Positions 4,308-30,069 of a DNA stretch of 30,241 bases are shown here, one piece after another. This DNA comes from Macrostomum lignano. Its lineage: Eukaryota. Both the position numbers and the translations under genes were made by a program. Where the stretch lies: NCBI GenBank assembly GCA_002269645.1, contig NIVC01004954.1, positions 1 to 30,241 of the forward strand. The letters are read 5' to 3'. Every line of letters begins with the position of its first letter. Positions within the stretch are counted from its first letter, which is position 1. The notes beneath the pieces were generated by a model that was given only the letters and a program-made list of their open reading frames with translations, made no database searches and was not told the DNA's origin.

Positions 4308-4371
4308 GTGAGCACCTTTCTTGATCAATATGTCAGCGTTTTCTAAAGTTCAATTTTTTTTAGGTTTGTGA

Positions 4372-7803: not shown

Positions 7804-7844
7804 GTGCGAATTCATTAGCAAAATGTGTCCCCCTGAATCCAATC

Positions 7845-8445
7845 TGCAATTCCTAGAATCGAATCCCCAATTCCTAGAATCGAATCCCCAATTCCTAGAA
7901 TCGAATCCCCAATTCCTAGAATCGAATCGCCAATTCCTAGAATCGAATCCCCAATTCCTAGAATCGAATCCCCAATTCCTAGAATCGAATCCCCAATTCC
8001 TAGAATCGATTCGCCAATTTCTAGAATCAAATCCCCAATTCCTAGAATCGAATCCCCAATTCCTAGAATCGAATCGCCAATTCCTAGAATCGAATCCCCA
8101 ATTCCTAGAATCGAATCCCCAATTCCTAGAATCGATTCGCCAATTCCTAGAATCGAATCCCCAATTCCTAGAATCGAATCCCCAATTCCTAGAATCGAAT
8201 CCCTACTTCCTAGAATCGAATCCCCAATTCCTAGAATCGAATTCCCAATTCCTAGAATCGAATCCCCAATTCCTAGAATCGAATTCATCCCGATTCCTAG
8301 AATCGAATCCCCAATTCCTAGAATCGAATTTATCCCCGATTCCTAGAATCGAAATTATCCCCGATTCCTAGAATCGAATCCCTTATTCCTAGAAACGAAT
8401 CTTTAATTTCTAGAATGGAATCCACGATTCCTAGAATTGAAAGTA
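7845..8445. repeat. 21-bp tandem repeat (TTCCTAGAATCGAATCCCCAA)n
   Basis: Directly visible; source of the FLESNPQ / ILGIGDS ORFs. Confidence 0.95.
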
Positions 8446-9014: not shown

Positions 9015-9690
9015 GCCTGTCATCGCCCCCTATGGCGCCCCCTCAGCGCCCTCTTTGGCGCACCCTCAGCACCCCTATGGCACCCCCTCAGCGCCCTCCA
9101 CGGCTCACCCCAGCACATCTATGGCGCCCCCTCAGTGCCCTTTATGGCGCACCCTCAGCACCCCTAAAGCACCTCTTCAGCACCCTCTATGGCGCCCCCC
9201 ACAGCACCCCTATGGCGCCCCCCACAGCACCGTATGACACCCCCCACAGCACCCCTGTGGCACCCCCCACAGCACCCCTGTGGCACCCCCACAGCGCCCT
9301 CTATGGCGCACCCCACAGCACCCCTATAGCACCTCTTCAGCACCCTCTATGGCGCCCCCCCACAGCACCCCTATGGCGCCCCCCACAGCACCGTATGGCA
9401 CCCCCCACAGCACCCCTGTGGCACCCCCACAGCACCCCTATGACACCCCCCACAGCATCCCTGTGGCACCCACAGCACCCCTATGGCACCCCCACAGCAC
9501 CCCTATGGCACCCCCACAGCACCCCTATGGCACCCCCACAGCACCCCTATGGCACCCCCACAGCACCCCTATGGCACCCCCACAGCACCCCTATGGCACC
9601 CCCTCAGCGCCCTCTATGGCGCACCCCACAACACCCCTATAGAACCTCTTCAGCACCCCTATGGCGCCACACCTTCAGCGCCCCTATGAC
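9015..9690. repeat. C-rich ~21-23-bp tandem repeat (CAGCACCCCTATGGCACCCCCA)n
   Basis: Directly visible; source of the Pro/His-rich ORFs at 9032-9760. Confidence 0.9.
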
Positions 9691-14138: not shown

Positions 14139-14338
14139 TCAATTACTTTTGTGTGCTTATTTACAACTTACTTAATCAATATTTGCACTATGTCCCTCTA
14201 AATATCGTTCTTTGTTTACACACATTTGCAGACTTGCTGTTTTTCCCCTTGTCACGAGCAATTAACAAAAGCAAATCTGCTTCTGAAAATGTAAGTTCTG
14301 AAACATCTGGTACTTTAACAATTTGCTTTTTTAATTTA

Positions 14339-14409
14339 ATGATGAATACTTGACAAGCATATGTCGGAATGCACTCTTGTGCTTTCTGTAGATACTATTT
14401 TCATTCTGA
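14339..14409 (+). ncRNA. SNORD27: Box C/D snoRNA, SNORD27/snR74 equivalent (18S Am27/28)
   Basis: Box C 14339-14345; guide GACAAGCATATG + D' CGGA complementary to 18S CAUAUGCUUGUC, D+5 = A of CAUAmUGC; box D 14406-14409. Confidence 0.9.
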
Positions 14410-14579
14410 ATTTTAAATTTATTCAATCAACTTTTAGGCATTGGCGCTGTCTCATGTATGGCATTGGCGAATTTTATTTCAATCAACTTTTGCAAATTTC
14501 AGGAGCTGGCATACAAAAATCGCCTACAAAGTCTTACAACATTTATTCGGTGAGTTTTTCTTCGAAGCTGTGAAACAGT

Positions 14580-14968
14580 TGTCAGAGAAACGATGATGAA
14601 TGCTTTAATCCATTCTCTGACTGAGCTTTTCAAATGTGCTTGAATAGTTATAAAAGGTCTTCCAAATTGGGGTTTTTTTGCCTCTATTTGTTAACCTTTT
14701 CTTTCAGGCACAAATTTGATTTGCTGGTGTGCGCGCCAGCTGGCTTGAACAGGCTCTCTTAGTGAAGTGCTGACTATTATTGTCACTTTAGGGTTTGCTT
14801 CAAGGGTGCTCGCTAAATACCTTTTTATAGTCGAAGACTGATTATTTATTATACCGCCTTTGACTTGTTAGTGAGCACTATAGAAGCGTGACCCGAAAAG
14901 CGAGTGCTTGCACTTCTTTTTTGCAGAGCCGTTTGGATGTAAATTATGGTTCTGAGCGTTCTCTGACA
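14580..14968 (+). ncRNA. SNORD17: Long box C/D snoRNA, SNORD17-like, copy b
   Basis: Box C 14593-14599; same guide TTAATCCATTC + D' CTGA 14617-14620; box D 14952-14955; 10-bp stem TGTCAGAGAA/TTCTCTGACA (included); ~310-nt insert sharing motifs with copy a. Confidence 0.8.
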
Positions 14969-15021
14969 GCGATTATTAGTATATGGTTAGTTTTTATAGC
15001 TTAATTAACGCACCAGTTTGT

Positions 15022-15102
15022 CATCCACAAATGATGATCAATTTTACACCGTCATGCTGTTTGATTCGCCTGATAATAAAACTATAGCAGCTGATGTGGA
15101 TG
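15022..15102 (+). ncRNA. Box C/D snoRNA, four-copy family with guide TACACCGTCATGCTGT, copy 1
   Basis: Box C 15031-15037, D' TTGA, box D 15091-15094, 8-bp stem CATCCACA/TGTGGATG (included). Confidence 0.85.
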
Positions 15103-15224
15103 CTATCAATGTCCTTATGACACTATTTAAAATCTAGAATATCGATTTTAAGTTTTATATCAGATTCAGAATCCTTAGAGATAAGGTTAGGTTGTGGCTT
15201 GGTTTAAAAAACTGGCTGTCAAAA

Positions 15225-15292
15225 ATGATGATAATTATTCACAACTGTTTGTTTTGAGTTAACATGACAATTTCACATGCATCACCATCTGA
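15225..15292 (+). ncRNA. SNORD33: Box C/D snoRNA, SNORD33/snR55 equivalent (18S Um1326), copy 1
   Basis: Box C 15225-15231; D guide CATGCATCACCA pairs 18S UGGUGGUGCAUG (one G-U); box D 15289-15292; D+5 = UGGUmGG. Confidence 0.88.
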
Positions 15293-15538
15293 TGTAGTTT
15301 ATTGAGTACATTTTAATGAACATGTAAGCTATGCTTGCCATTTTATAAAAAGTACAACCTGTCGCCCAAAAACTCTACTTTCATAGGTACTGGTAGTAGA
15401 TTATTAACAAGTTCTCAAGTCTGCCGGTCCAGTGTTTCATTTTCTAAATTTAAGGTAATTATTGGTTTTGACTATATTTTGCTTTTTGTGATCATACATA
15501 AACATAGCCTGAAATTTTCATTTAAGCATGTACGTCGC

Positions 15539-15635
15539 TTGTATTCACCAAAAATGATGACCAATTTTTATACACCGTCATGCTGTTTGACACACTTTTG
15601 ATAATTAAAAACAATGGCAGCTGAGGTGAATACAA
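15539..15635 (+). ncRNA. Box C/D snoRNA, four-copy family, copy 2
   Basis: Box C 15554-15560, guide TACACCGTCATGCTGT + TTGA, box D 15621-15624, 11-bp stem TTGTATTCACC/GGTGAATACAA (included). Confidence 0.85.
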
Positions 15636-15823
15636 TAGGCATTTCCCTTAACACCTTTGCTGCTCATCATCATTCAGAATCATCGTTTATCTTCATTTTG
15701 CTAACGAAAGTCTTTGTTCTTAAATCGATCTTCTAATTAAAAGCAGTCTGAAAAATCCGAAGCAAATAGTTCTCTTTAGTACGAGTAGAAGTCAGTAGCA
15801 AGCAAGCAACGTGTCCTCAGAAA

Positions 15824-15911
15824 TGTAATATGATGTTTGTTATCCCTGGCTTAGTTCAATAAGCTCTATGTAGTAAATACTTTATGCCAACTTCAATGGC
15901 TGCTGATTACA
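15824..15911 (+). ncRNA. SNORD1: Box C/D snoRNA, SNORD1/snR38 equivalent (28S Gm4392, yeast Gm2815)
   Basis: Variant box C ATGATGT 15830-15836; guide GTTATCCCTG + D' CTTA complementary to 28S CAGGGAUAAC, D+5 = CAGGmG; box D 15903-15906; stem TGTAAT/ATTACA. Confidence 0.82.
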
Positions 15912-16038
15912 GTTCTGTATACATACGATGATACGACACTTGCTGCTTTTTTGGTATTCAATTTTTAATTAGGACAATATATACTTTTTTTACTAATACT
16001 TAGGACTAGGTCTATTAACTGCAACTTGGGCGTTTTCA

Positions 16039-16119
16039 ATGATGATTGGAATTACCGTCGGAAGTTGGTGTACCAATTTGTGTACGCTGGCGATTCTTTG
16101 AAGAAAATTTGCTGTCTGA
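16039..16119 (+). ncRNA. SNORD65: Box C/D snoRNA, SNORD65/snR77 equivalent (18S Um627/578), with a U24-like D element
   Basis: Box C 16039-16045; guide TGGAATTACCG + D' CGGA complementary to 18S CGGUAAUUCCA; box D 16116-16119 preceded by GAAAATTTGCTG; stem GGGC/GCCC. Confidence 0.88.
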
Positions 16120-16188
16120 GCCCTTGATTTGCCATTTTTATGCCTATATACTACAGTGTAGATAGTCTTGCGTATAAGCCTACTTTTT

Positions 16189-16262
16189 ATGATGATAAAT
16201 ACGTTTGCTTACCTTATCTGTGATCTCTTAAAGGGACGTGATAAGACACTACAGCGCTCTGA
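16189..16262 (+). ncRNA. SNORD48: Box C/D snoRNA, SNORD48 equivalent (28S Cm1881/1868), copy 1
   Basis: Box C 16189-16195; D guide CTACAGCGCT pairs 28S GGCGCUGUGG-type sequence (after GAACU) with G-U pairs, D+5 = GGCGCm; box D 16259-16262. Confidence 0.78.
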
Positions 16263-16455
16263 TGTATATATATTGATCAGAAGTGTTTTTATATTGTAGA
16301 ATATTTTATAAATTTCTCTAACAATGCCACTTTCTCTTAATTACTACAGGTCTAAGCTGTCCTGGGGCCTTTTAAAATCAATATAAAAGTAAGTGAATTC
16401 AAAACCAATAACCAACTCAATTTTTGTAGTAATAAGCTCTACTATTATGTTTTTA

Positions 16456-16521
16456 ATGATGACTATTTCCTTACCTACTATGATTTATTACTAATGTGAA
16501 TGCAATATTTCCCGAATCTGA
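16456..16521 (+). ncRNA. Box C/D snoRNA predicted to guide 28S GUAGmGUAAGGG, copy 1
   Basis: Box C 16456-16462; guide TTCCTTACCTAC + D' ATGA complementary to 28S GUAGGUAAGGGA; box D 16518-16521 preceded by TTTCCCGAA. Confidence 0.85.
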
Positions 16522-16710
16522 AATGCTAGTCTAAATTACATATATGTAAGCTTAAATTTTTAGAAGTAAATCAAAAAATAAATTTTGTCACTAATTATTT
16601 TCAGATTTAGCGATCCAGTGTGACTCTGATCTAAATTTAAGGTAAGCTTCAATTCACTTTTTTTCATATTACTTGGGTTTATGTATAATCTTTGTTACAA
16701 GCAATAGATT

Positions 16711-16799
16711 GGCTTCATTCATGATGACTCAGATTTTACACCGTCATGTTGTATGATCTCGCATGAGTTTAGTTCTATTTGTCTCTGAGTTTTAAAGCC
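16711..16799 (+). ncRNA. Box C/D snoRNA, four-copy family, copy 3 (divergent 3' half)
   Basis: Box C 16721-16727, guide TACACCGTCATGTTGT + ATGA, box D 16785-16788, stem GGCTT/AAGCC (included). Confidence 0.8.
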
Positions 16800-17775
16800 T
16801 TTATTAATACCTTACAAACTCTTTAAAACCCCCGGATTTTAAACCCACCGTATTCCCATCCCCGGAACTCTTTATTGCATACATCCTTAAATTTAAAGTC
16901 ATACTGAAACAAAAACTTTAAAGTTAGAATAGAGGTTTGATGAATGTAGTAAATTCGTGTTAAATAAAGATTTAAGACAAGCATTGATTGATCTGACTAA
17001 GCGATGAGATGAGAGATTAATGAGCGGCACAAACACCAGAAAAAGCAGACAAACTTCACATGCTTACAGTTATTGTCCTGATTGAGTTACAGAGTTGAGA
17101 CTTGATATCGAGACAGAAAATAAGTCTAAAGAATGGTAGGGTGGCAAGTCAATAGAATTTCAGGTAGGGTGGCAGGTCAATAGAATTTCAGGTAGGTTAG
17201 CAGGTCAATAGAAAAAAGACATTAATCAAATTCTAATACTAATCAAACCCGAGCAGCACGAGGCAAGACATTATCGTGATGGTGAACCTGACTTCTCTAA
17301 GCCACCCGCCATCCGGACGCCAACCCAACCAGTTTGAGACCGCCAGATGTTGGAGGAGGGAATGAGCGACTGATCGTTCGGCAACAAATTTCATGCTAGC
17401 GTTAAGCAAAGTTACGGCAGCCAAACGATTGGGGTGGTTGCTACGCTGACAAAAAGCAGACTAACTTTAAAAGTGCACAGCTCCGTACAGGATTGACTTT
17501 ATGACTCGAAATTTTTACACGCTTGTGTCGAAATAGTTAGAGATTGTTTGTGTCAAATTTGAGTAGGTTTGATAAAGGTGGAGCGCCGCTATAGAGGATT
17601 AAGTAAAAAAATCCCGCTTTCTTAGCAGCAACTTTTTGCACTTTGAGGTGGGAATACTGGGAAGACGCTCTCCGTAGTGAGGTTAGGGTGGGTGCAAAAC
17701 GGTGTCATTTGGTTGAGCGGTTTGAGAGTCCATAGCGAACAAAATTGGCCACAGACACACAGTTTACAGATTTTA
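16800..17775. mobile_element. Probable interspersed-repeat insertion in a host-gene intron
   Basis: ~1 kb of higher-GC, snoRNA-free sequence in an otherwise compact region, with an internal 28-bp triplication (17135-17213). No TIR or TSD found; ends approximate. Confidence 0.35.
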
Positions 17776-17782
17776 GGTATAA

Positions 17783-17854
17783 ATGATGATAGAATATTGA
17801 CACCTCTTGTCTGATATTTACTAAGTAAATGCGGAGTTTATTAGCTCTATCTGA
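17783..17854 (+). ncRNA. SNORD44: Dual-guide box C/D snoRNA: D = SNORD44 equivalent (18S Am166), D' = 28S G equivalent to yeast Gm2791; copy 1
   Basis: Box C 17783-17789; TGACACCTCTTG + D' CTGA pairs 28S CA(A/G)GAGGUGUCA; TATTAGCTCTA + box D 17851-17854 pairs 18S UAGAGCUAAUA. Confidence 0.88.
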
Positions 17855-18037
17855 TCAAGTATCAAGCTCTTTTGTCCTAATAGAAATCGTTAAGAATCGA
17901 TGCAAGTTTTCATATTCACTTATTTCATTTTAGAGGACGCTAAAATCCAGCTGGAAAATTGTAAGCCTTCTTAACAGTGCTTCAGGTCAGTTAGCAATGC
18001 TTAAGTATTTTTCCCCACCCTTATTTTACTTTTTACA

Positions 18038-18111
18038 ATGATGAATTAATTATAGCATAGTTCATATGAACTGTACCCAGTGTACGGCATGTACAGAATT
18101 TTCAAGCCTGA
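18038..18111 (+). ncRNA. SNORD77: Box C/D snoRNA, SNORD77/80-D' (snR60) equivalent (28S Am1534, yeast Am817)
   Basis: Box C 18038-18044; guide GCATAGTTCA + D' ATGA complementary to 28S UGAACUAUGC, D+5 = GUGAAmC; box D 18108-18111. Confidence 0.85.
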
Positions 18112-18291
18112 TATTTTATCTACCTATTAGCTACCTATTAGTTGTACCTATTTGATAAAACGACATCTTTTTTACAAGTCAGATATTTTTTTAATTTCTT
18201 TCCAGTTTGCCGCGTCAATGAAGTTTCACTGCTACATCCATCCAAGGTAATTTTTATTGCTCAGCTCTATTATATAACATATCTATAAATG

Positions 18292-18367
18292 CAGTGGCGG
18301 ATCCAGGATTTTTTCCGTGAGGTCGGCCGACCCGATCCCCTTGACCCCCCTTCTGGATCCGACAGTG
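18292..18367. mobile_element. 76-bp mini-MITE with 15-bp TIRs and 8-bp TSD (hAT-like)
   Basis: CAGTGGCGGATCCAG ... CTGGATCCGACAGTG (13/15 inverted match); flanks TATAAATG / TATAAATA. Confidence 0.7.
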
Positions 18368-18376
18368 TATAAATAC

Positions 18377-18443
18377 GTGATGAAAATAACACATCTGTGT
18401 TTGATTTGGTCATGATATATAATTTCCATGCATCACCATCTGA
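18377..18443 (+). ncRNA. SNORD33: Box C/D snoRNA, SNORD33 equivalent, copy 2
   Basis: Box C GTGATGA 18377-18383; guide CCATGCATCACCA; box D 18440-18443. Confidence 0.87.
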
Positions 18444-18619
18444 TTTGCTTTTTTATTGGTATTAATAAAAAAAATATGTGCTTTTAATAAACTCGTCTCT
18501 ACTGTAGCCATATTTTCACTTGCCCATTTTAGTGCATTTTTCCTGGTTGGATATCAAGTCAAGTGTTAACTTGCAAAGTCAGGTAGGCTTACATTGTTGA
18601 ACTTGTGTTTTTGTTAATT

Positions 18620-18783
18620 GCGACTTTCTCGTTTCAATCACCGACACGCAAAAAATATCTTATTGGTGACTGATTCATTTAGTCGCTAGATTACACTGAC
18701 AGCCGCATAAAATCCAGAAGCAGAGTAGAGATCTTTTGTTTATCTCCCAAAGTGTCTGCTTTTGATGAGCGCGGATTACATTA
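18620..18783 (+). ncRNA. Candidate box H/ACA snoRNA
   Basis: Hairpin 1: GCGACT/AGTCGC lower stem, TCAATCACCGA/TTGGTGACTGA upper stem; H box AGATTA 18688-18693 (14 nt from the upper stem); hairpin 2: CCGC/GCGG and AGAAGCAGA/TCTGCTTTT; ACA at 18778-18780 (14 nt from the upper stem). Confidence 0.7.
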
Positions 18784-18853
18784 CTATTAATAGTAGTATT
18801 TAACAAAACCGACCTCTTTATAATGGCAGAAATGGCACGCAATGTTATAAATA

Positions 18854-18924
18854 ATGATGATAACCCATAATTCTTCACTTTGAACTGAACAAATATCAAC
18901 TGTGATGTTAGCACTGGGTTCTGA
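18854..18924 (+). ncRNA. SNORD37: Dual-guide box C/D snoRNA: D' = SNORD37 equivalent (28S Am3718), D = SNORD88/snR76 equivalent (28S Cm3701); copy 1
   Basis: Box C 18854-18860; TTCTTCACTTTGA + D' CTGA pairs UCAAAGUGAAGAA; C' GTGATGT; AGCACTGGG + box D 18921-18924 pairs CCCAGUGCU. Confidence 0.9.
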
Positions 18925-18968
18925 ACTATTATAATCATGGCTGCCACCTATATTTGTTTAGATTCTTG

Positions 18969-19059
18969 TTAATTATGATGAAATTTTAATTTCCACAGTT
19001 CAATCGTCCGATAATGCTTGATTAGATGCGGACTATTATTAGCTCTACCTGATAATTAA
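18969..19059 (+). ncRNA. SNORD44: Box C/D snoRNA, SNORD44 equivalent, copy 2 (different D' guide)
   Basis: Box C 18975-18981; CAGTTCAATCGT + D' CCGA; TATTAGCTCTA + box D 19049-19052; stem TTAATTA/TAATTAA (included). Confidence 0.87.
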
Positions 19060-19225
19060 ACAGTTGTTTTGTTATTAAAGTGAGTTTTTTGCATTTTTAA
19101 TTGCAATTTTCATGTTATTTTTTTATTTCAGATGTCTTCTACCGACCAATGTCATCTCGGGGCTTTGAGGGGTAAGGCGTCTTTTTTATCTACTATTAGT
19201 AGCATAATTTTCACTTTCTATTTAC

Positions 19226-19320
19226 ATGATGATCTCTATTGATTAGTCTTTCTGAGCTTTGTAATTAGTTAATAAACATTTTAACCAATTACAAAACTGC
19301 TGACTAACGCCCCTATCTGA
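19226..19320 (+). ncRNA. SNORD80: Box C/D snoRNA, D guide = SNORD80-D/snR60 equivalent (28S Gm1625, yeast Gm908); copy 1
   Basis: Box C 19226-19232; GATTAGTCTTT + D' CTGA 19252-19255 pairs 28S AAAGACUAAUC; CGCCCCTAT + box D 19317-19320 pairs AUAGGGGCG. Confidence 0.87.
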
Positions 19321-19528
19321 TAATTAGTGTGTTAGTTGAAACTTTCATATGGTATTGAAGTATTTCATAAGACACCCGTCTAAGAAATTCATCCATTGTT
19401 TGTTTTAACACCGTTTTAGAATCCGATTCGTTTTTATGGCAAAATGGCACTGGTTCAACAAGTCTACAGAGCCAACAGGTGAGTTAATAGCCAGAATTAT
19501 TTTAATATTTTTGCCTATGCTGACTGTT

Positions 19529-19603
19529 ATGATGATATGAATCACCTTTGGCTTTTGATAGGTTTCTTTAAATGAAAATTATCTACCATGCATCACCATC
19601 TGA
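19529..19603 (+). ncRNA. SNORD33: Box C/D snoRNA, SNORD33 equivalent, copy 3
   Basis: Box C 19529-19535; guide CCATGCATCACCA; box D 19600-19603. Confidence 0.87.
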
Positions 19604-19771
19604 GAAATTTTTCTAACATTTACCAAAATCAGCCAGATGTGTGTGTCCAGAAATTCTACAGAAATTCTCCATCTCTACTCTGCATTCCAGTTGGCCCGTT
19701 CAAATTTTCAAACAAGAGTTAAAACAGGTAAAACTGACATTGTTTTAGTTTCTAACATCAATATACAATTC

Positions 19772-19862
19772 AGCATCCATTAATGATGATTTCATTTTAC
19801 ACCGTCATGCTGTTTGATTTCAATAATGAAATTTAACCATATTGGCAGCTGAGATGGATGCT
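19772..19862 (+). ncRNA. Box C/D snoRNA, four-copy family, copy 4
   Basis: Box C 19783-19789, guide TACACCGTCATGCTGT + TTGA, box D 19849-19852, 9-bp stem AGCATCCAT/ATGGATGCT (included). Confidence 0.85.
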
Positions 19863-20064
19863 CTACGGTGTACATTTGGTCTTATAGCATATTTAAGAAA
19901 ATTATACTCGTAGATAGCTAATTTGACTGCGTGTGTTCTAAGACGAATTTCTCTAAGTTTCTTCTTATCGTGTAACTTATGAATGGATAGTTTTGAGCAA
20001 ACAAGCTGGCAATGGTGTAATAATCTTATCTATCAGATAGAATACACGCTTGGCTATTTTTATC

Positions 20065-20136
20065 ATGACGATCCAACAATTTAGTATCAACCTTATCAGT
20101 GTATTGGATTCAATATAAAGCACTACAGCGCTCTGT
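20065..20136 (+). pseudogene. Decayed SNORD48-like copy 2
   Basis: Retains ACCTTATC and CACTACAGCGCT of the 16189 copy, but box C is ATGACGA and box D is CTGT. Confidence 0.65.
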
Positions 20137-20496
20137 CGTCTAGATAAAGCTGGTATTTTAGCTCCTATTCGAGGCCTAAGTGTTTTGCTTAACGTATCTT
20201 CCTTATTTTATGTTGGTGCCTCCCAGGGTTTTTTTTTGTGCGCAGAGTGTGCGTATGCACCCTAAATTTTAAAATCGCACCCTGAAATTAAAAAAGTAGG
20301 TGCGGTTTAGGTGCGGTCTTATAACCATTTTTCTTTAAAGGCTTAACCATGCTTAAGCTATTTTTTATGCACTGCCTTAAAATATGAAACAAAATAACTC
20401 TTTAATTCCTATTAAGTCATATAGGCAATATAGCCTATAGCTATAGCCTTATGTAAGATATTAAAATATACATTCCCAGTTGTCTGAACTGTGAGC

Positions 20497-22983
20497 AATG
20501 TGAGGGTTTCACGAGAGATATTCAGACAAAGGCTCCCTAAAACACGCCCCACACCGGGCCCCGAACTGCTACACATTATAACATTTTTTGTCAATGCAGT
20601 ATTTGATTGCAAGGAAAAGTTAAAATAGTAATGGAATAAATATCTTTATTTATTTTTTTAAATATTATTATTTTTATATTCTCGTTTTCATTATTAAATT
20701 ATAATATTATTATTTTATTAATATTATTATTAATATCACTTATTGTTCACCGAATTTTATATTTCAAAGTAAAAAAACTAAATTTAATAAAAACTTGAAG
20801 CTTAACAGAAAATGCATTCTGAAGTGTCTTTAGTTATAGTCCAATTTGTTTTAATGTGTAGCGCTGCAGGGCGGTGCGGGGCGTGTTTTAGGGAGACCCA
20901 TTCAGACAGACATTCAAAATGATTGTCTGTAACTTCAAACAAAATTGACCCGCTTCAACCATCTTTTTGGCAAATACTTACGCAAGTGTTGGGCGTCGAA
21001 TAAGCTTTAATTTATTAACTGAAGTAAAAATCCTTCTGACATACATTGATTTAAAAATTGCTTAGCAACACTAGCTCTGATTAGAAATCGCTTTACTGTT
21101 GACTAAAATTGTTTTGATCGTAGCAGCCTAAAAGCAGATACTGGATTTAAAAATGCTTCGATTTACTCTATACGCATGTCTCAGCTTTAAAATGACACCT
21201 CAGGCGTCGCAAAAGACAGCTTTGATGCTGAGATATTCGACACTAAACATGCATTGCTTTGCGCAATCTCACATTCAGAAATTTCACTGATTTTTTGTCG
21301 ATATTTGTGCAGTTGCCATGTCCTTGTTTTTCATCAGAATCTTGTCAAATTCTAGTCATGTCTATACGCATGTCTCAGCTTTAAAATGACACCTCAGGCA
21401 TTGCAAAAGACAGCTTTGATGCTGAGATATTCGACACTAAACATTGCTTTGCTCAAACTCACATTCGGAAACTTCACTGATTTTTATTCAATATTTGTTC
21501 AGATGCTTGTCTACTTCTCCATTTATTAACCATCGCATGGAGCCTTGCTAACGTACAAGTGTATGTAGTTACAGTAAATGGGGTTTTTGTGACTCACTTA
21601 AACTTGTTTACGCATTCTGCAGCTATTCGCCGCCTTTCATTGGAGTGATTCATGGAGTCCAGTTGATAAATTTCCACAAATTGGACTGCTTCTACGTCAG
21701 ATCTCAACATTTGGAACCGTCCTTGAACTATTTCAGAGTTAAGTGAGCTAATGGCATCAAATGGAAGGCTAGTGCTCGTACTTGTAAGCGAAGCAGGTTC
21801 ACAATTGAAATGGTTATATTCATGGCCATGGGATCTAAACTGATCTGTTTTACTTTCACGATCGCTTTGGTCTCAGAAGGAGCAGCAGTTGATGGACTGA
21901 GGTGAGAAGAAGATGTGTCACGACTTGAGCTGTTTATAGAAAATATCTTTATCCAATTAAATATTTTCATGCGGCTCCTTAGGTTGTTCCGAATTCCGAG
22001 TCTAGAAGTCAAGACAGAAAAAAAGTTAAGAACTGCTACTGTAGTCCGTAGGGATTGGAAAGCTTAGCAGTACATTAGAAATCGCCAGTTCAATCTAAAA
22101 AGTTTGAAGTACATATAGCTATTGGGTTGCAACAACAGTAGAAAAAATTCTTCCTTTTTATTTTATTCCCACCGCTTACCTCATTCCGATTTGGATAGCA
22201 GAATTGCCACGCAAAAAAAGTAAAAACATAACAATAAACTATTTGCTTCATATTAATTGCCACTGACTGTTAATAAACGCGACGTCAATTTCTCTCAATA
22301 ACAGTTGGAACATGTTTCTCGTACACTCGTATATTTATTTGAACCGCAAAGCGGTGAAAAAGTCATGATTGGTTGCCATATGTACAAATGTACACTCACA
22401 GACTCACTGACTCAGGTACAATCTATGCAATATAAAGGCAGGAATCATTAAAAATCAAATACTTAAGACAGTTTAAGAGAAGTCCAGGTTTAAACTGGAC
22501 ATGACTAAAATTTGACAAGTTTCTGATGAAAAACAAGGACACGGCAACTGCACAAATATCGACAAAAAATCAGTGAAATTTCTGAATGTGAGATTGCGCA
22601 AAGCAATGCATGTTTAGTGTCAAATATCTCAGCATCAAAGCTGTCTTTTGCGATGCCTGAGGTGTCATTTTAAAGCTGAGACATGCGTATAGAGTAAATC
22701 GAAGCATTTTTAAATCCAGTATCTGCTTTTAGGCTGCTACAATCAAAACAATTTTAGTCAACAGTAAAGCAATTTCTAATCAGAGCTAGTGTTGCTAAGC
22801 AATTTTTAAATCAATGTATGTCAGAAGGATTTTTACTTCAGTTAATAAATTAAAGCTTATTCGACGCCCAACACTTGCGTAAGTATTTGCCAAAAAGATG
22901 GTTGAAGCGGGTCAATTTTGTTTAAAGTTACAGACGATCGTTTCGAATGTCTGTCTGAATATCTCTCGTGAAACCCTCACATT
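20497..22983. mobile_element. Foldback-like element with ~490-bp terminal inverted repeats
   Basis: AATGTGAGGGTTTCACGAGAGATATTCAGACA (20497-20528) plus 20909-21362 is the near-perfect reverse complement of 22498-22983; partial tandem duplication of the left arm at ~21363-21490. Confidence 0.85.
20529..20899. mobile_element. 371-bp MITE with 9-bp TSD (Mutator-like) inserted in the left arm of the foldback element
   Basis: TSD ATTCAGACA at 20520-20528 and 20900-20908; inverted CTCCCTAAAACACGCCC / GGGCGTGTTTTAGGGAG near the ends; very AT-rich core. Confidence 0.8.
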
Positions 22984-23228
22984 CTAAACAAGACTCAAGA
23001 GAAATTGCACTCTGAGCCTTAAAATCGCACCTTGAAATTTGGCACAAGGTGCGATTTCGCACCTTATCTCTGGCGAAAAAAAAAACCCAGGACTGCCTCC
23101 CTAAAATCCTCAGATTATGTGACGCACCTAATGCTGCATGATTCAGTTTACTTGTAAGTGACTGCCAATATGCTCGTAATATAATTAAATAAATATATAA
23201 TTTGTATACTCGTACCAGAAACTAACTA

Positions 23229-23305
23229 GTGATGAATAATTCCTTACCTACTATGATAATGTTTTAGAAAACTCCAGTTGTGATTTAAAAATATCCCTAA
23301 TCTGA
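23229..23305 (+). ncRNA. Box C/D snoRNA predicted to guide 28S GUAGmGUAAGGG, copy 2
   Basis: Box C GTGATGA 23229-23235; TTCCTTACCTAC + D' ATGA; box D 23302-23305 preceded by ATATCCCTAA. Confidence 0.85.
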
Positions 23306-23485
23306 CTTTATTACTAATTATAGTATTTTACGCTACTATCTTAGGCATTTTTTTCAATTACTTTAAGTAGTCACTTTCCTCTCAAAATTTTAGTACATAT
23401 TCTTGCTTGGCTGGCTAGTGCTGCAACTAATTTAGCAAGGTAAGATCAGTAGGACCTGTAGAGGCTTATGTTATATTAAGAATCC

Positions 23486-23554
23486 GTGATGATAACTCAG
23501 AATTCTTCACTTTGACCTGATTATTGACAATGTGATGATAGCACTGGGTTCTGA
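23486..23554 (+). ncRNA. SNORD37: Dual-guide box C/D snoRNA SNORD37+SNORD88 equivalent, copy 2
   Basis: Box C 23486-23492; TTCTTCACTTTGA + D' 23517-23520; perfect C' GTGATGA; AGCACTGGG + box D 23551-23554. Confidence 0.9.
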
Positions 23555-23615
23555 ATTGTTTTTAATATAACTAGCCTCTAGTTTTTTAAAATCAGATTGC
23601 TTTTTTATTAGCTAA

Positions 23616-23691
23616 ATGATGACAAAAACAATTTGACACCTCTTGTCCGATGTAAATAACATAAATGCGGACTGTTATTAGATATACCTGA
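23616..23691 (+). ncRNA. Box C/D snoRNA, copy 3 of the 17783 family (keeps 28S Gm2791-type D' guide, D guide degenerate)
   Basis: Box C 23616-23622; TGACACCTCTTG + D' CCGA; TATTAGATATA (vs TATTAGCTCTA) + box D 23688-23691. Confidence 0.85.
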
Positions 23692-23885
23692 GAAATCATT
23701 TCTAGGACTCTAGTAAAATGCGAAAATAATAAGCTACTATTGTTTAAGTCAATCAATTAAATCTTTTCAGCAGCGAATGCGGCTGATTGCTTCAAAATAT
23801 GTCGAATTCAATTTTTTTCGCAGGTAGGCGTCTCTTATCAGTTGTTTGATTCTGAACTCTTAAGCAAGCTACTCCACCACCTGTA

Positions 23886-23949
23886 ATGATGATTTATATG
23901 GATTAGTCTTTCTTAGTTCTCAAATGTGCAGACAAACGCCCCTATCTGA
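23886..23949 (+). ncRNA. SNORD80: Box C/D snoRNA, Gm1625/908 guide, copy 2
   Basis: Box C 23886-23892; GATTAGTCTTT + D' CTTA; CGCCCCTAT + box D 23946-23949. Confidence 0.87.
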
Positions 23950-24139
23950 CTACTGTCAATTATAGCTATGCAAAATAGCTCATTTATGTAGTGTGCCAGA
24001 CCTTTTATTGTCTGATTGTTAATTTACCATTTTATTTTTGCAGGAGTTCAATCAAATCCAGTTTGTGCTCTAAGATCTGCAGCTTTAAGGTGAGACAATG
24101 CTATTTCTAACCCAATAAATCAGGAGTTCACGTTGTAAA

Positions 24140-24218
24140 ATGATGAGACATTTTTGGATCAACCATATGAGTCAATGTAGCTATTGGCTAAATGAATTGC
24201 GTCTAAAATTCTCTCTGA
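24140..24218 (+). ncRNA. Box C/D snoRNA with D' guide to the 18S 5' end (predicted Um8); U6 element degenerate
   Basis: Box C 24140-24146; GGATCAACCA + D' ATGA complementary to 18S UGGUUGAUCC; CTAAAATTCTCT + box D 24215-24218. Confidence 0.85.
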
Positions 24219-24261
24219 TTTATTGCCCCTTTCCAATATCCTACTAACCAGCTGTACATCA

Positions 24262-24340
24262 ATGATGAGACATTTCCTGGATCAACCATATGAGCCTGAC
24301 TATTGTTAGGTCTATGAATGGTGCCTAATCTTCTCTCTGA
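24262..24340 (+). ncRNA. SNORD7: Dual-guide box C/D snoRNA: D' = 18S U8, D = U6 snRNA Am47 (SNORD7/mgU6-47 equivalent)
   Basis: Box C 24262-24268; GGATCAACCA + D' ATGA; CTAATCTTCTCT (12-nt perfect complement of U6 AGAGAAGAUUAG, nt 43-54) + box D 24337-24340; D+5 = A47. Confidence 0.88.
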
Positions 24341-24898
24341 ATGATAGCAAATATCTACTAGGTCTGTTACTACAGGATTAAGCTGGGTAACTTTTAAGCG
24401 TCACTTGCTTCTCTTTACATTTCAGAGCCTCGAAATTGCTTCTGGAGATTTCCTTTTTTATATTATCCGGCTCTACAAAACAATTGTGATAGACATTTTA
24501 TTTGATTTGATTTGATTAAAGTCAAATTTTGACAGCAAATTGTAACTAATTTCTGTTATAATATATTTATTTACTGAGCCTATAAGCTTGCTAACAAACG
24601 AACGGTCTTTCTCTGTTTTCGCTGTTTCATGTATTTAAAGAGTTTATTAAATACAAATACGTAATATTATCTTGAAATCATGATATTCGTGATTTGATTA
24701 CACCCTGAGAACATTCTGTCACTTTCACTAAAGGCATATTAGGATAGAGGATAGAAAAATGCAAGGCCCGTAACAGAAACTAGATATGTATAGAACGTGA
24801 AGGAATGTGCAGTTCTGAAAGCTAGTGTGTGAGGGAGCTGTAGTCGGGTAGTAGGTAGTAAGGGTGGAAAATGTAGGTTAGTAGTCATACTTGCGCAA

Positions 24899-25040
24899 CC
24901 TTGGGAATCACTCGGCCGTTTCTATTGGCAACACGCATGTAAGTCGCTATTGGCTGAGAGCAGTCGCGTGACTACTATTCCGTCCAATAGCGGCTTACAT
25001 GTGTGTGTTGCCAATAGAAACGGCCGGGTGAATCCCTAGG
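24899..25040. mobile_element. 142-bp palindromic MITE-like element
   Basis: Two ~55-bp arms are near-perfect reverse complements (CACTCGGCCGTTTCTATTGGCAACAC / GTGTTGCCAATAGAAACGGCCGGGTG); flanks TTGCGCAA / TTGCGCCC resemble a degenerate 8-bp TSD. Confidence 0.65.
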
Positions 25041-25074
25041 TTGCGCCCAAGCATGGTAGTAGTGTTAAAGACGC

Positions 25075-25360
25075 AGGTTTAGGGTAGCAGTGTAAAGGGA
25101 GGCAGGTGTAGGGTAGCAGCGTGAAGGAAGGCAGGTGTAGGTAGCAGTGTGAAGGGAGGCAGGTGTAGGTAGCAGCGTGAAGGGAGGCAGGTGTAGGTAG
25201 CAGTGTGAAGGGAGGCAGGTGTAGGTAGCAGTGTGAAGGGAAGCAGGTGTAGGTAGCAGCGTGAAGGGAGGCAGGTGTTGGTAGCAGCGTGAAGGGAAGC
25301 AGGTGTAGGTAGCAGCGTGAAGGGAGGTGTAGGTAGTAGTGTGGAGGGAGGCAGGTGTAA
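25075..25360. repeat. 28-bp purine-rich tandem repeat (GTAGGTAGCAGTGTGAAGGGAGGCAGGT)n
   Basis: About 9-10 units directly visible. Confidence 0.92.
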
Positions 25361-25461
25361 GTAACAGCTTTAAGAGCTACGAACTTACTACTTTCGTTTC
25401 TACCTATATTCAGTCTTGCTTGATAATAATTTAAACAAATCACTACAACTTTCCCACAGCC

Positions 25462-26010
25462 ATGTTTCGCAAATTCGACGACAAAGAGAACATCTCGTCC
25501 GTAAACAACGCCAAGAACAGTGTCCAGAAGGGTATCAGAAACACCATTCTGACGCAGTATCCGGGATGCGCAGATTACGTTGACCAGATTCTACCCAAGA
25601 AGGAGACGCTCAGCGTTGTCAAATGCCACGAGCACATCGAGCTGTACGCCAACCCGGCTGGCGAGGTGCTGTTCTTCAGGCAGCGCGACTCGCCGCTGTA
25701 TCCCAGCTTGAAACTGCTGCACAGATATCCGTTCATGCTGCCGCACATGCAGGCGGACAAGGGCGCTATCAAATTCCTGCTGAACGGGTCCAATGTGATG
25801 TGCCCGGGCCTGACCACGCCTGGCGGCCGGCTGTCCCAGGTGCCAGCTAGCACAGTTGTTGCCGTCATGGCCGAAGGCAAACAGCACGCGTTAGCAATCG
25901 GCTTGACGGCGATGAGCGCGGACGAGATTGCCAGCAAGAACAAAGGAGTTGGCATCGAGACTGTGCACTGTTTAAATGACGGCCTGTGGCGGCTGCGTTC
26001 TGTCAAGTAG
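25462..26010 (+). CDS. MCTS1: Malignant T-cell-amplified sequence 1 homolog (pre-PUA + PUA domain; translation recycling/reinitiation factor, DENR partner)
   Basis: Single 182-aa ORF with hallmark MFxKFDxKEN start, CHEHIE, LFFRQR, YPxLxLLHxYP, DKGAIKFxLxGxNxMCPGLT, AEGKQHAL and HxLNDGLW motifs; intronless. Confidence 0.97.
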   Translation: MFRKFDDKENISSVNNAKNSVQKGIRNTILTQYPGCADYVDQILPKKETLSVVKCHEHIELYANPAGEVLFFRQRDSPLYPSLKLLHRYPFMLPHMQADKGAIKFLLNGSNVMCPGLTTPGGRLSQVPASTVVAVMAEGKQHALAIGLTAMSADEIASKNKGVGIETVHCLNDGLWRLRSVK

Positions 26011-27620: not shown

Positions 27621-27651
<31 letters not shown>

Positions 27652-27925
27652 ACAGGGACTGAGACTGGGACTGGGACTGGGGACAGAGACTGGGACAGGG
27701 ACAGGGACTGGGGCTGGGACGGGACTGGGACAGGGACTGGGACAGGGACTGGGACTGGGACTGGGACTGGGGACAGAGACTGGGACAGGGACTAGGACAG
27801 GGACAGGGACTGGGACAGGGACATGGACTGGGACTGGGACTGGGGACAGAGACTGGGACAGGGACTAGGACAGGGACAGGGACAGGGACTGGGACAGGGA
27901 CATGGACTGGGACTGGGACAGGGAC
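27620..27925. repeat. Hexamer microsatellite (GGGACT/GGGACA)n
   Basis: Directly visible. Confidence 0.95.
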
Positions 27926-28161: not shown

Positions 28162-28454
28162 GTGAGTCCTGGCTGCATTGGTGTTGCTGGGAAGTGTCCC
28201 TGTCGGTCTCACATTGTCTGCTGTGTGTGAGCAATCAGACACTCACTGCACGAATGGAATTTGAAAAGAACATTATGATTGTAATAACAAATATGATCTT
28301 ATTTTTTCTTTAATCTGATTAGCTTTGTTCATTTCTCATAATGCTTCTGACATAGTGACAATTAGTATAGTCGTTTTTATGGCAAGTTTGAGCACAAAAG
28401 TCTAGATAATATGGAATTGAAGGCTTTTAAAATGTGAGTCATGGATGAATTGGC

Positions 28455-28645
28455 GGTGAATAGTGGGTGAATCATGGATTAATCAGGGGTGAATAGTGGG
28501 TGAATCATGAATGAATCAGGGGGTGAATAGTGGGGTGAATCATGGATTAATCAGGGGGTGAATAGTGGGTGAATCATGGATTAATCAGGGGGTGAATAGT
28601 GGGTGAATCATGGATTAATCAGGGAGTCAGTGGTGGGTGAATCAA
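28455..28645. repeat. ~31-33-bp tandem repeat (GTGAATAGTGGGTGAATCATGGATTAATCAGGGG)n
   Basis: About 5-6 units directly visible. Confidence 0.92.
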
Positions 28646-29104: not shown

Positions 29105-30069
29105 ATGAGTTCCAGCATCTTAACTGGACTGACTGCGGCGATGCTGCTGCCACTCCTGGTGCACTGCGGCAATGGAACCATGCACAGCAGCATCTCGCTC
29201 GGCGGCTGCGTGGTGCCGCAGACTCCGCAGCACTCGCTGGCGGCCTCGAGCGCCCGCATGTGCGCCTTCCTGTGCTCTCAGCTCCGTCGTCCTTGCATCG
29301 CCTGGAGCCACCGCGCAGGCGTCTGCAACATGTCGGACAGCCTCCAGACCGCCAGTCTGACGAACGACACCGACTGCCAGGCGTGGAGCGCCCTGCGCCA
29401 GCTCGGCCTCGTCGCCTTCTGGCCCATGAGCAACGTCACTCGGACTCGCAATGCGGTCTCGAACAGCGGCCATCTCGACCTGCAGGAGAACATCCCGATG
29501 CAGTACACGGACAGCGCCGTCAACTTCACTGGTCAGTCGGGTGTGTCAGAGCGGTTCAACATTGACGAGCTGACTTCGGTGTGTCTCACCAGCCTCACCA
29601 TGTCAGTGTGGGTCAAGGTCACCAACCCAGCGAGAGGTTCGATGCCTCTGCTGGAGGGCCTCACAATGCCTTCTTCATACCACACTCGGTTTTGGCTTCA
29701 TCCTACAACTACCGACATCGAGTTCACCGTTGCATTCAAGGTCCGAGTGTCCGGACCCACCGACACGGCCAGCGGTTGGACCCACATCGCCGCGGTGTAC
29801 GACAAGCAGACACCGGAAGTCAGGATCCTCGTCAACGGAACTCGACAGGCCACCAGCGGCTCGGCCACCGCTTTGACCTCGTGCGCGGACTTCGGCAGCA
29901 GCGTGCAGATCGGAGCCGTCAGCCGCAATGCCGATCACAAACGCGTGTTCCAAGGCTTCATGAGATGCTTCGGAGTGTCAGAGAGAGCTTGAGCGACTCT
30001 GAAATTGCCGCTTTGATCGCAGCTGTGCTAAGCTGGGTGCCAGCAGACTTAGAAAACGATTCAATCTAA
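29105..30069 (+). CDS. Secreted protein: signal peptide, PAN/apple-like module, ConA-like lectin/LamG (pentraxin-like) domain; 1-nt frameshift near 29989
   Basis: Hydrophobic N-terminus MSSSILTGLTAAMLLPLLVHC; CAFLC...C...C module; LamG-like motifs TMSVWVKV, WTHIAAVYD, RILVNG, VQIG, FQGFMRCFGV; annotated ORF stops at ERA* (29992) but the shifted frame continues LSDSEIAAL to TAA 30069. Confidence 0.75.

What the first reader, a model, noticed from the sequence alone, without database searches (positions are those of the whole stretch)
24140..24340. Tandem snoRNAs targeting the extreme 5' end of 18S (U8), one doubling as the U6 Am47 guide
Seen: both copies carry GGATCAACCA before D' ATGA; copy 2 also has a perfect 12-nt U6 complement before box D, which has two substitutions in copy 1. 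Knowledge: U6 Am47 is guided by SNORD7/mgU6-47 in vertebrates; the 18S 5' end is the segment U3 snoRNA boxes A'/A pair with during central pseudoknot formation. Inference: D+5 predicts Um8, which I do not know as a human or yeast site (I recall it from trypanosomatid SSU rRNA; to be verified). One RNA would link spliceosome and small-subunit maturation, and might compete with or hand over to U3.
Basis: partly seen in the sequence, partly recalled or inferred. Interest (0 to 1): 0.78.

Follow-up and report, generated by a model that had tools for sequence, protein, structure and literature searches.

The report
Flatworm dual-guide box C/D snoRNA pair
Two tandem small nucleolar RNA genes in a flatworm intron carry guide sequences for the very start of 18S rRNA and, in the intact copy, for U6 spliceosomal RNA; both guides are already known separately in other organisms, so this is a new combination, not a new kind of RNA.

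Summary
Window 24136-24222 and 24258-24345 (+) are two tandem box C/D snoRNA genes in one putative intron (24090-24425). They end a dense plus-strand snoRNA cluster in Macrostomum lignano-type DNA.

**Guides.** Both copies carry GGATCAACCA one nucleotide upstream of a D' box AUGA. This is complementary to 18S nt 5-14, and the D'+5 rule points to U8. Copy 2 carries CUAAUCUUCUCU directly upstream of box D. That is the U6 Am47 guide element shared by three Rfam families.

**Copy 1 is probably decaying.** Across three ~97% identical paralogous loci, copy 2 keeps all boxes and both guides. Copy 1 carries a different lesion in each locus.

**The 18S guide is not unique.** Rfam's Tetrahymena TtnuCD24 has it in the same register with a canonical CUGA D' box. 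So do about 27-30 distinct environmental eukaryotic snoRNA-like sequences.

**Dual U6/18S guides have precedent** in Neurospora CD11 and Arabidopsis SnoR53Y. The particular pairing seen here was not found elsewhere.

**Untested.** Expression, methylation of U8 and any interplay with U3.

Verdict: a real, ordinary-architecture snoRNA with a new pairing of two known guide specificities. Moderate interest.

The parts
24136..24222 (+). snoRNA copy 1: box C/D snoRNA, probably a decaying duplicate
   Evidence: Boxes and 4-bp terminal stem. It carries a different lesion in each of the three paralogous loci: 9 of 89 columns vary, against 3 of 86 in copy 2.
24140..24146 (+). copy 1 C box ATGATGA
   Evidence: Mutated to ATAATAA in paralog L002.
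24156..24165 (+). copy 1 D' antisense element GGATCAACCA (18S nt 5-14)
   Evidence: The first G is T in paralog L001.
24167..24170 (+). copy 1 D' box AUGA (non-canonical first base)
   Evidence: There is one spacer nucleotide between the guide and the box, so U8 lies at D'+5.
24192..24197 (+). copy 1 C' box AUGAAU
   Evidence: Its position-6 U can pair with the position-1 A of D' (inference from K-turn rules).
24203..24214 (+). copy 1 degenerate U6 guide CTAAAATTCTCT
   Evidence: Two mismatches to the U6 complement. L001 and L002 carry a different variant with a 3-nt insertion.
24215..24218 (+). copy 1 D box CTGA
24258..24345 (+). snoRNA copy 2: intact dual-guide box C/D snoRNA
   Evidence: All boxes and both guides are invariant in the window, L001 and L002. 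Sub-threshold Rfam matches to snoZ30, snoZ30a, snoU6-47 and TtnuCD24.
24262..24268 (+). copy 2 C box ATGATGA
24279..24288 (+). copy 2 D' antisense element GGATCAACCA (18S nt 5-14, U8 at D'+5)
   Evidence: The same element in the same register occurs in TtnuCD24 and in environmental snoRNAs.
24290..24293 (+). copy 2 D' box AUGA
24295..24310 (+). copy 2 internal hairpin between D' and C' (CCUGAC / GUUAGG, loop UAUU)
   Evidence: RNAfold. The only change inside it among the paralogs (24308 A>G in L002) turns A-U into G-U, which keeps the pair.
24314..24319 (+). copy 2 C' box AUGAAU
24325..24336 (+). copy 2 D antisense element CTAATCTTCTCT (U6 nt 43-54, A47 at D+5)
   Evidence: Identical to the guide core of Rfam snoU6-47, snoZ30 and snoZ30a.
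24337..24340 (+). copy 2 D box CTGA
24090..24425 (+). putative host intron (AAG|GTGAGA ... TTTCAG|AG) holding both snoRNAs
   Evidence: Read. Both splice-site motifs are invariant in the three loci. No transcript data are available, so this is inferred.
14334..23950 (+). context: dense plus-strand cluster of further box C/D snoRNA candidates
   Evidence: Sub-gathering Rfam hits to SNORD27, 34, 33, 37, 18 and 12, snR55 and Z102. Box and stem scan.

Best explanation
Both elements are intron-encoded box C/D snoRNA genes, produced by a local tandem duplication. They form the last unit of a multi-snoRNA host gene in Macrostomum lignano.

Copy 2 is the working gene. After splicing it would be trimmed to a roughly 80-88-nt RNA. 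That RNA would assemble with the standard C/D proteins (Snu13, Nop56, Nop58, fibrillarin) on its C/D and C'/D' motifs. It would then guide two 2'-O-methylations:
- Through the D guide, U6 snRNA A47, the last A of ACAGAGA. This is the job done by SNORD7/mgU6-47 in vertebrates and flies.
- Through the D' guide, 18S rRNA U8, by a 10-bp duplex with nt 5-14.

Copy 1 began as the same dual guide and is now redundant and decaying.

Shown: box architecture, the complementarities and their registers, paralog conservation, and recurrence of the 18S guide in other eukaryotes. Inferred: expression, snoRNP assembly, both methylations and the intron boundaries.
For: 1. Complete C/D anatomy in both copies, with 4-bp terminal stems of different sequence (TAAA/TTTA versus ATCA/TGAT) and an internal D'-C' hairpin of different sequence.
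2. The D guide of copy 2 is identical over CUAAUCUUCUCUCUGA to the consensus of Rfam snoU6-47, and nearly identical to snoZ30 and snoZ30a. The register places A47 at D+5.
3. The D' guide plus one spacer nucleotide plus the D' box recurs in Rfam TtnuCD24 (UUGGAUCAACCACCUGA).
4. It also recurs in a metagenome scan. Of 88 distinct matches, 42 have the canonical C of CUGA, where 25% would be expected by chance (binomial P = 3e-6). About 27-30 of these are compact C/D snoRNAs.
5. One such snoRNA (L026) pairs the element with the classical 18S Am27/28 guide. Two others (L099, L065) match TtnuCD24 at 34-37 bits.
6. Among the window, L001 and L002 (about 97% identical), copy 2 has 3 variable columns of 86, none in a box or guide core, and one is a pair-preserving A>G in the hairpin. 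Copy 1 has 9 of 89. These include a destroyed C box in L002, a guide G>T in L001 and different D-guide variants.
7. Copy 2 ends about 80-85 nt upstream of the putative 3' splice site (the D box ends 85 nt before it, the terminal stem 80 nt). The position of a box C/D snoRNA within its host intron is reported to be critical for efficient processing in mammalian cells (Hirose and Steitz 2001, listed). Copy 1 lies about 205 nt away.
8. The pair lies in a cluster of snoRNA candidates, all on the same strand.
Against: - No expression data and no modification data for this species.
- The D' box is AUGA and the C' box is UGAAU, both off consensus.
- The 18S duplex is only 10 bp, near the lower limit for guides.
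- No 18S Um8 is mentioned in any paper I could search. To my knowledge the complete modification maps of yeast and human 18S have no such site.
- All Rfam matches are far below gathering scores.
- The three loci are only about 3% diverged, so the conservation argument has little power. Copy 1 versus the rest of the intron gives Fisher P = 0.006 by columns and 0.018 by events.
Confidence: 0.68

Rival explanations
1. The D' element pairs with the 5' end of pre-18S but does not methylate it. It would act as a folding chaperone or timer that holds nt 5-14 single-stranded until U3 box A or the central pseudoknot takes over, much like the non-methylating pairings of U14 or U3.
For: - The D' (AUGA) and C' (UGAAU) boxes are non-canonical.
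- The target overlaps the segment that U3 box A and the central pseudoknot use (established knowledge).
- The TtnuCD24 consensus D guide is complementary to the adjacent 18S nt 16-23, so the ciliate RNA could clamp about 19 nt of the 5' end.
- No Um8 is reported in the searchable literature.
Against: - The spacing of exactly one nucleotide between guide and D' box is kept from flatworm to ciliate to diverse environmental eukaryotes, most with a canonical CUGA. Register conservation is the signature of methylation guides; a pure chaperone has no need of it.
- The AUGA/UGAAU pair still allows the tandem G-A pairs plus a compensating U-A pair (inference).
- The first 20 nt of rRNAs are excluded from RiboMeth-seq analysis (PMC8053127), so absence from published maps is weak evidence.
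Confidence: 0.14
2. Only the U6 Am47 guide is functional. The 18S complementarity in the D' position is an inactive relic or a coincidence in this animal.
For: - Degenerate D' and C' boxes.
- A duplex of minimal length.
- The vertebrate SNORD7 and other Rfam U6-47 families have unrelated 5' halves.
- Many snoRNAs use only one of their two guide positions (PMC3273799).
Against: - The 10-mer and its register are identical in both duplicated copies, while 21 of 90 other positions differ.
- They are intact in copy 2 of all three loci.
- The same element in the same register is independently present in many eukaryotes, which makes coincidence unlikely.
Confidence: 0.13
3. Copy 1 is not decaying but sub-functionalised. 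It would remain a dedicated 18S-U8 guide (and perhaps gain a new D-guide target), while copy 2 keeps both jobs.
For: - In the window's own locus, copy 1 keeps intact C, D', C' and D boxes, the terminal stem and the full 18S guide. Only its U6 guide is damaged.
- In L001 and L002 the copy 1 D guide has just one true mismatch to U6.
Against: - The L002 copy has lost its C box (ATAATAA) and the L001 copy has lost the first guide base, so the gene is dispensable in at least some paralogous loci.
- It lies far (about 205 nt) from the 3' splice site, in an intron that already holds a better-placed snoRNA.
Confidence: 0.25
4. Neither copy is expressed. The region is a dead remnant of a snoRNA host gene.
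For: No transcript evidence could be obtained with the tools available. M. lignano is a neopolyploid with much redundancy (PMC10733133).
Against: Copy 2 is intact in all three loci. Splice-site motifs are invariant. The cluster holds many snoRNA candidates on the same strand, with conserved guides such as the SNORD37-like element.
Confidence: 0.04

Closest known systems
SNORD7 / mgU6-47 / Z30 (Rfam RF00288 snoZ30, RF01196 snoZ30a, RF01221 snoU6-47)
   Same: Box C/D snoRNA whose D guide (C/U)UAAUCUUCUC(U/G)-CUGA pairs with U6 nt 43-54 and places A47 at D+5. Copy 2 matches this element exactly. The Drosophila homologue is nucleolar (PMC3884663).
   Different: The rest of the RNA is unrelated: 15-19 bits against gathering scores of 50-80. 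The consensus sequences of these families carry no 18S 5'-end element in their 5' halves.
Tetrahymena TtnuCD24 (Rfam RF02300) and its environmental relatives
   Same: Identical antisense element GGAUCAACCA, one spacer nucleotide, then the D' box, directly after a C box. Predicted target is SSU U8.
   Different: TtnuCD24 has a canonical D' CUGA, is only 58 nt long, and its D guide is complementary to 18S nt 16-23 and not to U6. The window scores 20.6-25.9 bits against a gathering score of 75. The target assignment for TtnuCD24 is my reading of the Rfam consensus; the paper's text held here does not give it.
snR53-type multi-target guides: Neurospora crassa CD11, Arabidopsis SnoR53Y
   Same: One box C/D snoRNA serves both U6 (Am47/A48) and 18S rRNA (PMC2780460; PMC8053127). 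The link between spliceosome and small subunit therefore has precedent.
   Different: Per PMC2780460, the 18S site of CD11 is A793, the snR53/snoR53Y site, and not the 5' end. In CD11 the U6 guide is assigned to D', whereas here it is the D guide.
U3 snoRNA box A / A' pairing with the 18S 5' end
   Same: It pairs with an overlapping stretch of the 18S 5' end during early small-subunit assembly (established knowledge).
   Different: U3 is a long RNA with boxes A, A', B, C, C' and D. It does not methylate and is essential for cleavage. The RNAs here are about 80-nt canonical guide snoRNAs.

Membership tests
Box C/D methylation-guide snoRNA | C box RUGAUGA near the 5' end and D box CUGA near the 3' end, brought together by a short terminal stem | tested here: met
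   ATGATGA and CTGA in both copies. The 4-bp stems are TAAA/TTTA and ATCA/TGAT.
Box C/D methylation-guide snoRNA | Internal D' and C' boxes | tested here: inconclusive
   AUGA and AUGAAU are present at the right places in both copies, but both deviate from consensus. The G-A dinucleotides are kept, and D' A1 can pair with C' U6 (inference).
Box C/D methylation-guide snoRNA | Antisense element of at least 10 nt ending 0-1 nt upstream of D or D', with the target nucleotide opposite position 5 | tested here: met
   12 nt to U6 (A47 at D+5) and 10 nt to 18S (U8 at D'+5)..
Box C/D methylation-guide snoRNA | Stable expressed RNA bound by fibrillarin, Nop56, Nop58 and Snu13; target actually methylated | not testable with these tools
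   No transcriptome or modification data were reachable.
SNORD7 / mgU6-47 (RF00288, RF01196, RF01221) | D guide complementary to U6 around the ACAGAGA box, with A47 at D+5 | tested here: met
   Copy 2 has the exact CUAAUCUUCUCUCUGA. Copy 1 in the window fails this, with 2 mismatches.
SNORD7 / mgU6-47 (RF00288, RF01196, RF01221) | Whole-RNA similarity reaching the Rfam gathering score | tested here: not met
   18.2 against 50, 18.6 against 80 and 18.2 against 54 bits. No match at gathering.
TtnuCD24 (RF02300) | GGAUCAACCA plus 1 nt plus D' box immediately downstream of the C box | tested here: met
TtnuCD24 (RF02300) | Whole-RNA similarity reaching the Rfam gathering score (75 bits), and the same D guide | tested here: not met
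   25.9 and 20.6 bits. The D guide here targets U6, not 18S nt 16-23.
snR53 / SnoR53Y / CD11 dual U6+18S guides | 18S guide directed at A79x together with the U6 A47 guide | tested here: not met
   The 18S guide here targets nt 5-14. The window gave no snR53 match at E<=10.

The most novel reading that the evidence does not exclude
2'-O-methylation of SSU rRNA U8, or at least snoRNP docking on nt 5-14, may be an ancient and widespread eukaryotic feature. It would be retained in ciliates, many uncultured protists and at least one bilaterian, and lost in the yeast, human and plant models. It would have been overlooked because RiboMeth-seq pipelines discard the terminal ~20 nt. Its guide must be timed against U3 box A pairing and central pseudoknot formation. 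In the flatworm it has been fused with the U6 Am47 guide into one RNA.
Probability: 0.4. Interest if true: 0.55.

Novelty: new member of a known kind. Interest (0 to 1): 0.33.

Why it matters
For the flatworm, this supplies the missing U6 Am47 guide and a first look at a large, unannotated snoRNA host gene.

More generally, a guide for 18S nt 5-14 with a fixed register recurs from a ciliate to a bilaterian. That predicts a modification or docking event on the segment that U3 and the central pseudoknot compete for. Sequencing-based methylation maps routinely ignore this region. If Um8 exists, it is a simple handle for asking when the 5' end of 18S is accessible during small-subunit assembly.

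The architecture itself is ordinary, and both guide specificities have precedents.

Tried and rejected
- **Rfam at gathering thresholds on the window.** No match at all. Only permissive scans were informative.
- **Metagenome scan for the dual pattern** GGATCAACCA-N25-55-TAATCTTCTCNCTGA. Zero hits, so I have no evidence that the combined RNA exists elsewhere. The collection is poor in animal genomes, so this is weak negative evidence.
- **Rfam gathering scan of 20 environmental loci.** Only a tRNA was found, so these snoRNAs are uncatalogued.
- **Taxon of the commonest environmental carrier (L007/L111 group).** Its nardilysin-like ORF has only unnamed environmental relatives at 83-94% identity, and named hits at 40% or below. 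The taxon is unresolved. I ran no further search on another group.
- **Literature.** 'TtnuCD24' is not in any searchable text, and the Tetrahymena paper's held text and supplements do not give its target. 'Um8', '18S-U8' and similar terms returned nothing relevant. A search for the guide sequence returned only unrelated primers and siRNAs. The Dictyostelium and Arabidopsis maps mention no U8 site. No Macrostomum snoRNA study was found.
- **Synteny through MCTS1.** The closest non-self homologue is only 66% identical, so no related species' locus could be fetched this way.
- **Canonical CTGA at 24296-24299 as the D' box of copy 2.** Rejected, because copy 1 lacks it and it would put the 18S duplex out of register.
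- **Other environmental snoRNAs carrying a U6 guide.** None has a U6 complement of 9 nt or more. The single exception, L118, is an irrelevant A/T-rich 9-mer.

Full report
**Where the window comes from.** The intronless MCTS1/Tma20-type ORF at 25462-26010 carries Pre-PUA and PUA domains. It encodes a protein that occurs, nearly full length, on two contigs of assembly GCA_002269645.1: NIVC01000206.1 and NIVC01004669.1, fetched as L001 and L002. That accession is the Mlig_3_7 genome of the free-living flatworm Macrostomum lignano (PMC5730564), a neopolyploid (PMC10733133). The window is identical to neither contig. It aligns to both at about 97% over the region of interest and carries an extra ~2.9 kb at 20224-23094. 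I therefore had three closely related copies of the locus to compare, and no more distant relative. The best non-self MCTS1 homologue is 66% identical.

**The observation.** Copy 1 spans 24136-24222 and copy 2 spans 24258-24345. Each has these features in order:
- a C box ATGATGA
- 9-10 nt, then GGATCAACCA
- one T, then ATGA (D')
- a hairpin
- ATGAAT (C')
- 17 nt of guide
- CTGA (D)
- a 4-bp terminal stem

The terminal stems differ in sequence (TAAA/TTTA and ATCA/TGAT). So do the internal hairpins: 8 bp in copy 1, and CCUGAC/GUUAGG in copy 2. This is what one expects if the structure, not the sequence, is maintained. The two copies share 69 of 90 aligned positions.

Copy 2 has CTAATCTTCTCT abutting box D, a perfect 12-nt complement to U6 nt 43-54. 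Copy 1 has CTAAAATTCTCT, with two substitutions. The exact patterns are far above chance in the window: 0.00 and 0.02 expected, 2 found each. The two copies are one duplication, however, and count as one event.

**What the guides point to.** By the standard rule, the nucleotide paired to the fifth position upstream of D or D' is methylated (established knowledge).
- The D guide of copy 2 selects U6 A47.
- The D' guide of both copies selects 18S U8. The duplex covers U5-C14, and the spacer T faces C4 unpaired.

I could not fetch M. lignano U6 or 18S.

**Relation to known families.** Rfam gives nothing at gathering scores. In permissive scans, the 3' part of copy 2 aligns to all three families that hold U6 Am47 guides: snoZ30 (SNORD7), snoZ30a and snoU6-47. 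It is identical to them over CUAAUCUUCUCUCUGA, at 15-19 bits against cut-offs of 50-80. The 5' part of both copies aligns to one family only, Tetrahymena TtnuCD24. Its consensus reads UGAUGAUACAUUUGGAUCAACCACCUGA: the same antisense 10-mer, one spacer nucleotide and a canonical D' box. The RNA therefore works like SNORD7 on one side and like TtnuCD24 on the other. It is a sequence-level member of neither.

- The pattern left the first base of the D' box free. It is C in 42 of 88, where 25% is expected (P = 3e-6).
- About 27-30 of those 42 are compact 54-85-nt RNAs with C, D', a UGAUG-type C' and D boxes. They sit on eukaryote-like contigs spanning 18-60% G+C.
- The remaining matches lie mostly in GC-rich coding-like sequence and look like chance.
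- Among the snoRNA-like sequences the spacer nucleotide is A, C or U.
- Their D guides differ from lineage to lineage.
- One (L026) carries the classical 18S Am27/28 guide of U27/snR74 type, a 12-nt match.
- Two (L099, L065) resemble TtnuCD24 over their whole length at 34-37 bits.
- None carries the U6 guide.
- A direct scan for the dual pattern found nothing.
- None of these sequences reaches an Rfam gathering score.

The guide for 18S nt 5-14, with U8 in register, is therefore a recurrent and evidently old element of eukaryotic snoRNAs that is barely catalogued. The flatworm's D' box AUGA is unusual against this background. It still keeps the G-A needed for the tandem sheared pairs. Its first base A can pair with the U at position 6 of the C' box UGAAU, replacing the usual C-G (my inference from K-turn geometry).

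**Which copy works?** In the three-way alignment, copy 2 has three variable columns of 86. Two lie just 5' of the 12-nt U6 duplex. The third turns an A-U pair of the hairpin into G-U. Copy 1 has nine variable columns of 89, and each locus carries a different lesion:
- In L002 the C box reads ATAATAA.
- In L001 the first G of the 18S guide is T.
- In L001 and L002 the D guide carries a 3-nt insertion and one true mismatch to U6.
- In the window the D guide has two mismatches to U6.

The rest of the intron has 3 variable columns of 157. Copy 1 against everything else gives Fisher P = 0.006 by columns and 0.018 by events. With only about 3% divergence the power is low, but the pattern points to one constrained gene and one redundant duplicate that started with the same two guides.

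Position fits this reading. Both copies lie in one putative intron (AAG|GTGAGA at 24090, TTTCAG| at 24425, both invariant). Copy 2 ends about 80-85 nt from the 3' splice site and copy 1 about 205 nt from it. The position of a box C/D snoRNA within its host intron is reported to be critical for efficient processing in mammalian cells (Hirose and Steitz 2001, cited). The intron boundaries are inferred from sequence only.

**Context.** The plus strand from about 14.3 kb to 24.4 kb is packed with box C/D candidates. A simple box-and-stem scan finds nine on the plus strand, including both copies. Permissive Rfam scans give same-strand, sub-threshold hits to SNORD27, 34, 33/32, 37 (twice), 18 and 12, snR55 and Z102/R77. 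The pair is thus the last unit of a large snoRNA host gene, about 1.1 kb upstream of the MCTS1 ORF.

**Mechanism.** Most likely copy 2 is released from the spliced intron and assembles into a standard C/D snoRNP. It then methylates U6 A47 in the nucleolus, where the fly mgU6-47 resides (PMC3884663), and pre-18S U8.
- The U6 half is well supported by identity with established guides.
- The 18S half is supported by register conservation across eukaryotes, not by any detected methyl group. I found no report of 18S Um8.
- Such a site lies in a blind spot. The Arabidopsis RiboMeth-seq study states that 20 nt at both RNA ends were not analysed (PMC8053127).

Nothing here tests it. A non-methylating chaperone role is the main rival. 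The TtnuCD24 consensus D guide is complementary to the adjoining nt 16-23, which gives that idea some colour for the ciliate RNA.

**Novelty.** A single snoRNA serving both U6 and 18S has precedents in N. crassa CD11 (18S Am793, U6 Am47 and 26S Am356; PMC2780460) and in Arabidopsis SnoR53Y (U6 A48; PMC8053127). The U6 guide is classical, and the 18S 5'-end guide exists in Rfam. What appears new:
- the particular pairing of the two guides in one RNA
- the presence of the 18S 5'-end guide in a bilaterian
- the breadth of that guide among uncultured eukaryotes

I file the finding as a new member of a known kind, with moderate interest.

Noticed in passing
Rfam RF02300 consensus as shown; environmental loci L099 418-477 and L065 2805-2863: The D guide of Tetrahymena TtnuCD24 (UUCUACUGGCGA-CUGA) is complementary to 18S nt 16-23 (GCCAGUAG). 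This is directly next to the D' target nt 5-14, so one 58-nt RNA could pair with about 19 contiguous nucleotides of the 18S 5' end.
   Followed up: partly
L026, minus strand, snoRNA starting about 880 nt into the reverse complement: An environmental snoRNA combines the 18S-U8 D' guide with a 12-nt D guide for the classical 18S Am27/28 site (U27/snR74 type).
   Followed up: partly
L003-L122 (metagenome contigs): About 27-30 distinct uncatalogued box C/D snoRNAs share the GGAUCAACCA-N-CUGA element. The commonest (L007 group, 13 contigs, marine, about 49% G+C) comes from a eukaryote whose nardilysin-like protein has only unnamed environmental relatives.
   Followed up: partly
window 14334-23950 (+): A dense cluster of box C/D snoRNA candidates, with internally duplicated units. 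SNORD37-like elements occur at 18853 and 23485. SNORD34/12-like elements occur at 15023 and 19773. SNORD33-like elements occur at 15218 and 19522. All score below Rfam gathering.
   Followed up: partly
window 24895-25045: A near-perfect hairpin of about 68 bp (-111.5 kcal/mol, z = -18.6) lies between the snoRNA host gene and MCTS1. It gives sub-threshold hits to the plant MIR851/MIR399 and animal mir-249/mir-96 models. Probably an inverted-repeat element or a hairpin RNA.
   Followed up: partly
window 20224-23094: A segment of about 2.9 kb is present in the window but absent from both paralogous contigs L001 and L002. Its nature was not examined.
   Followed up: no
window 25462-26010 (+): An intronless MCTS1/Tma20 gene (Pre-PUA and PUA domains) is only 66% identical to the nearest non-self homologue. 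It is possibly a retrocopy, or simply reflects a deep-branching lineage.
   Followed up: partly
window 1256-1577, 3347-3886, 4365-4733, 5825-6303, 7835-8441, 9027-9665, 25055-25367, 27621-27925, 28434-28644: Many minisatellite arrays with periods of 6-45 nt account for most of the long 'ORFs' in the mechanical ORF list.
   Followed up: partly
window 29105-29992 (+): An ORF with a signal-peptide-like N-terminus and a Laminin_G_3 / concanavalin-A-like domain. A second, 95-96% identical partial copy lies about 3 kb downstream in L001 and L002.
   Followed up: partly
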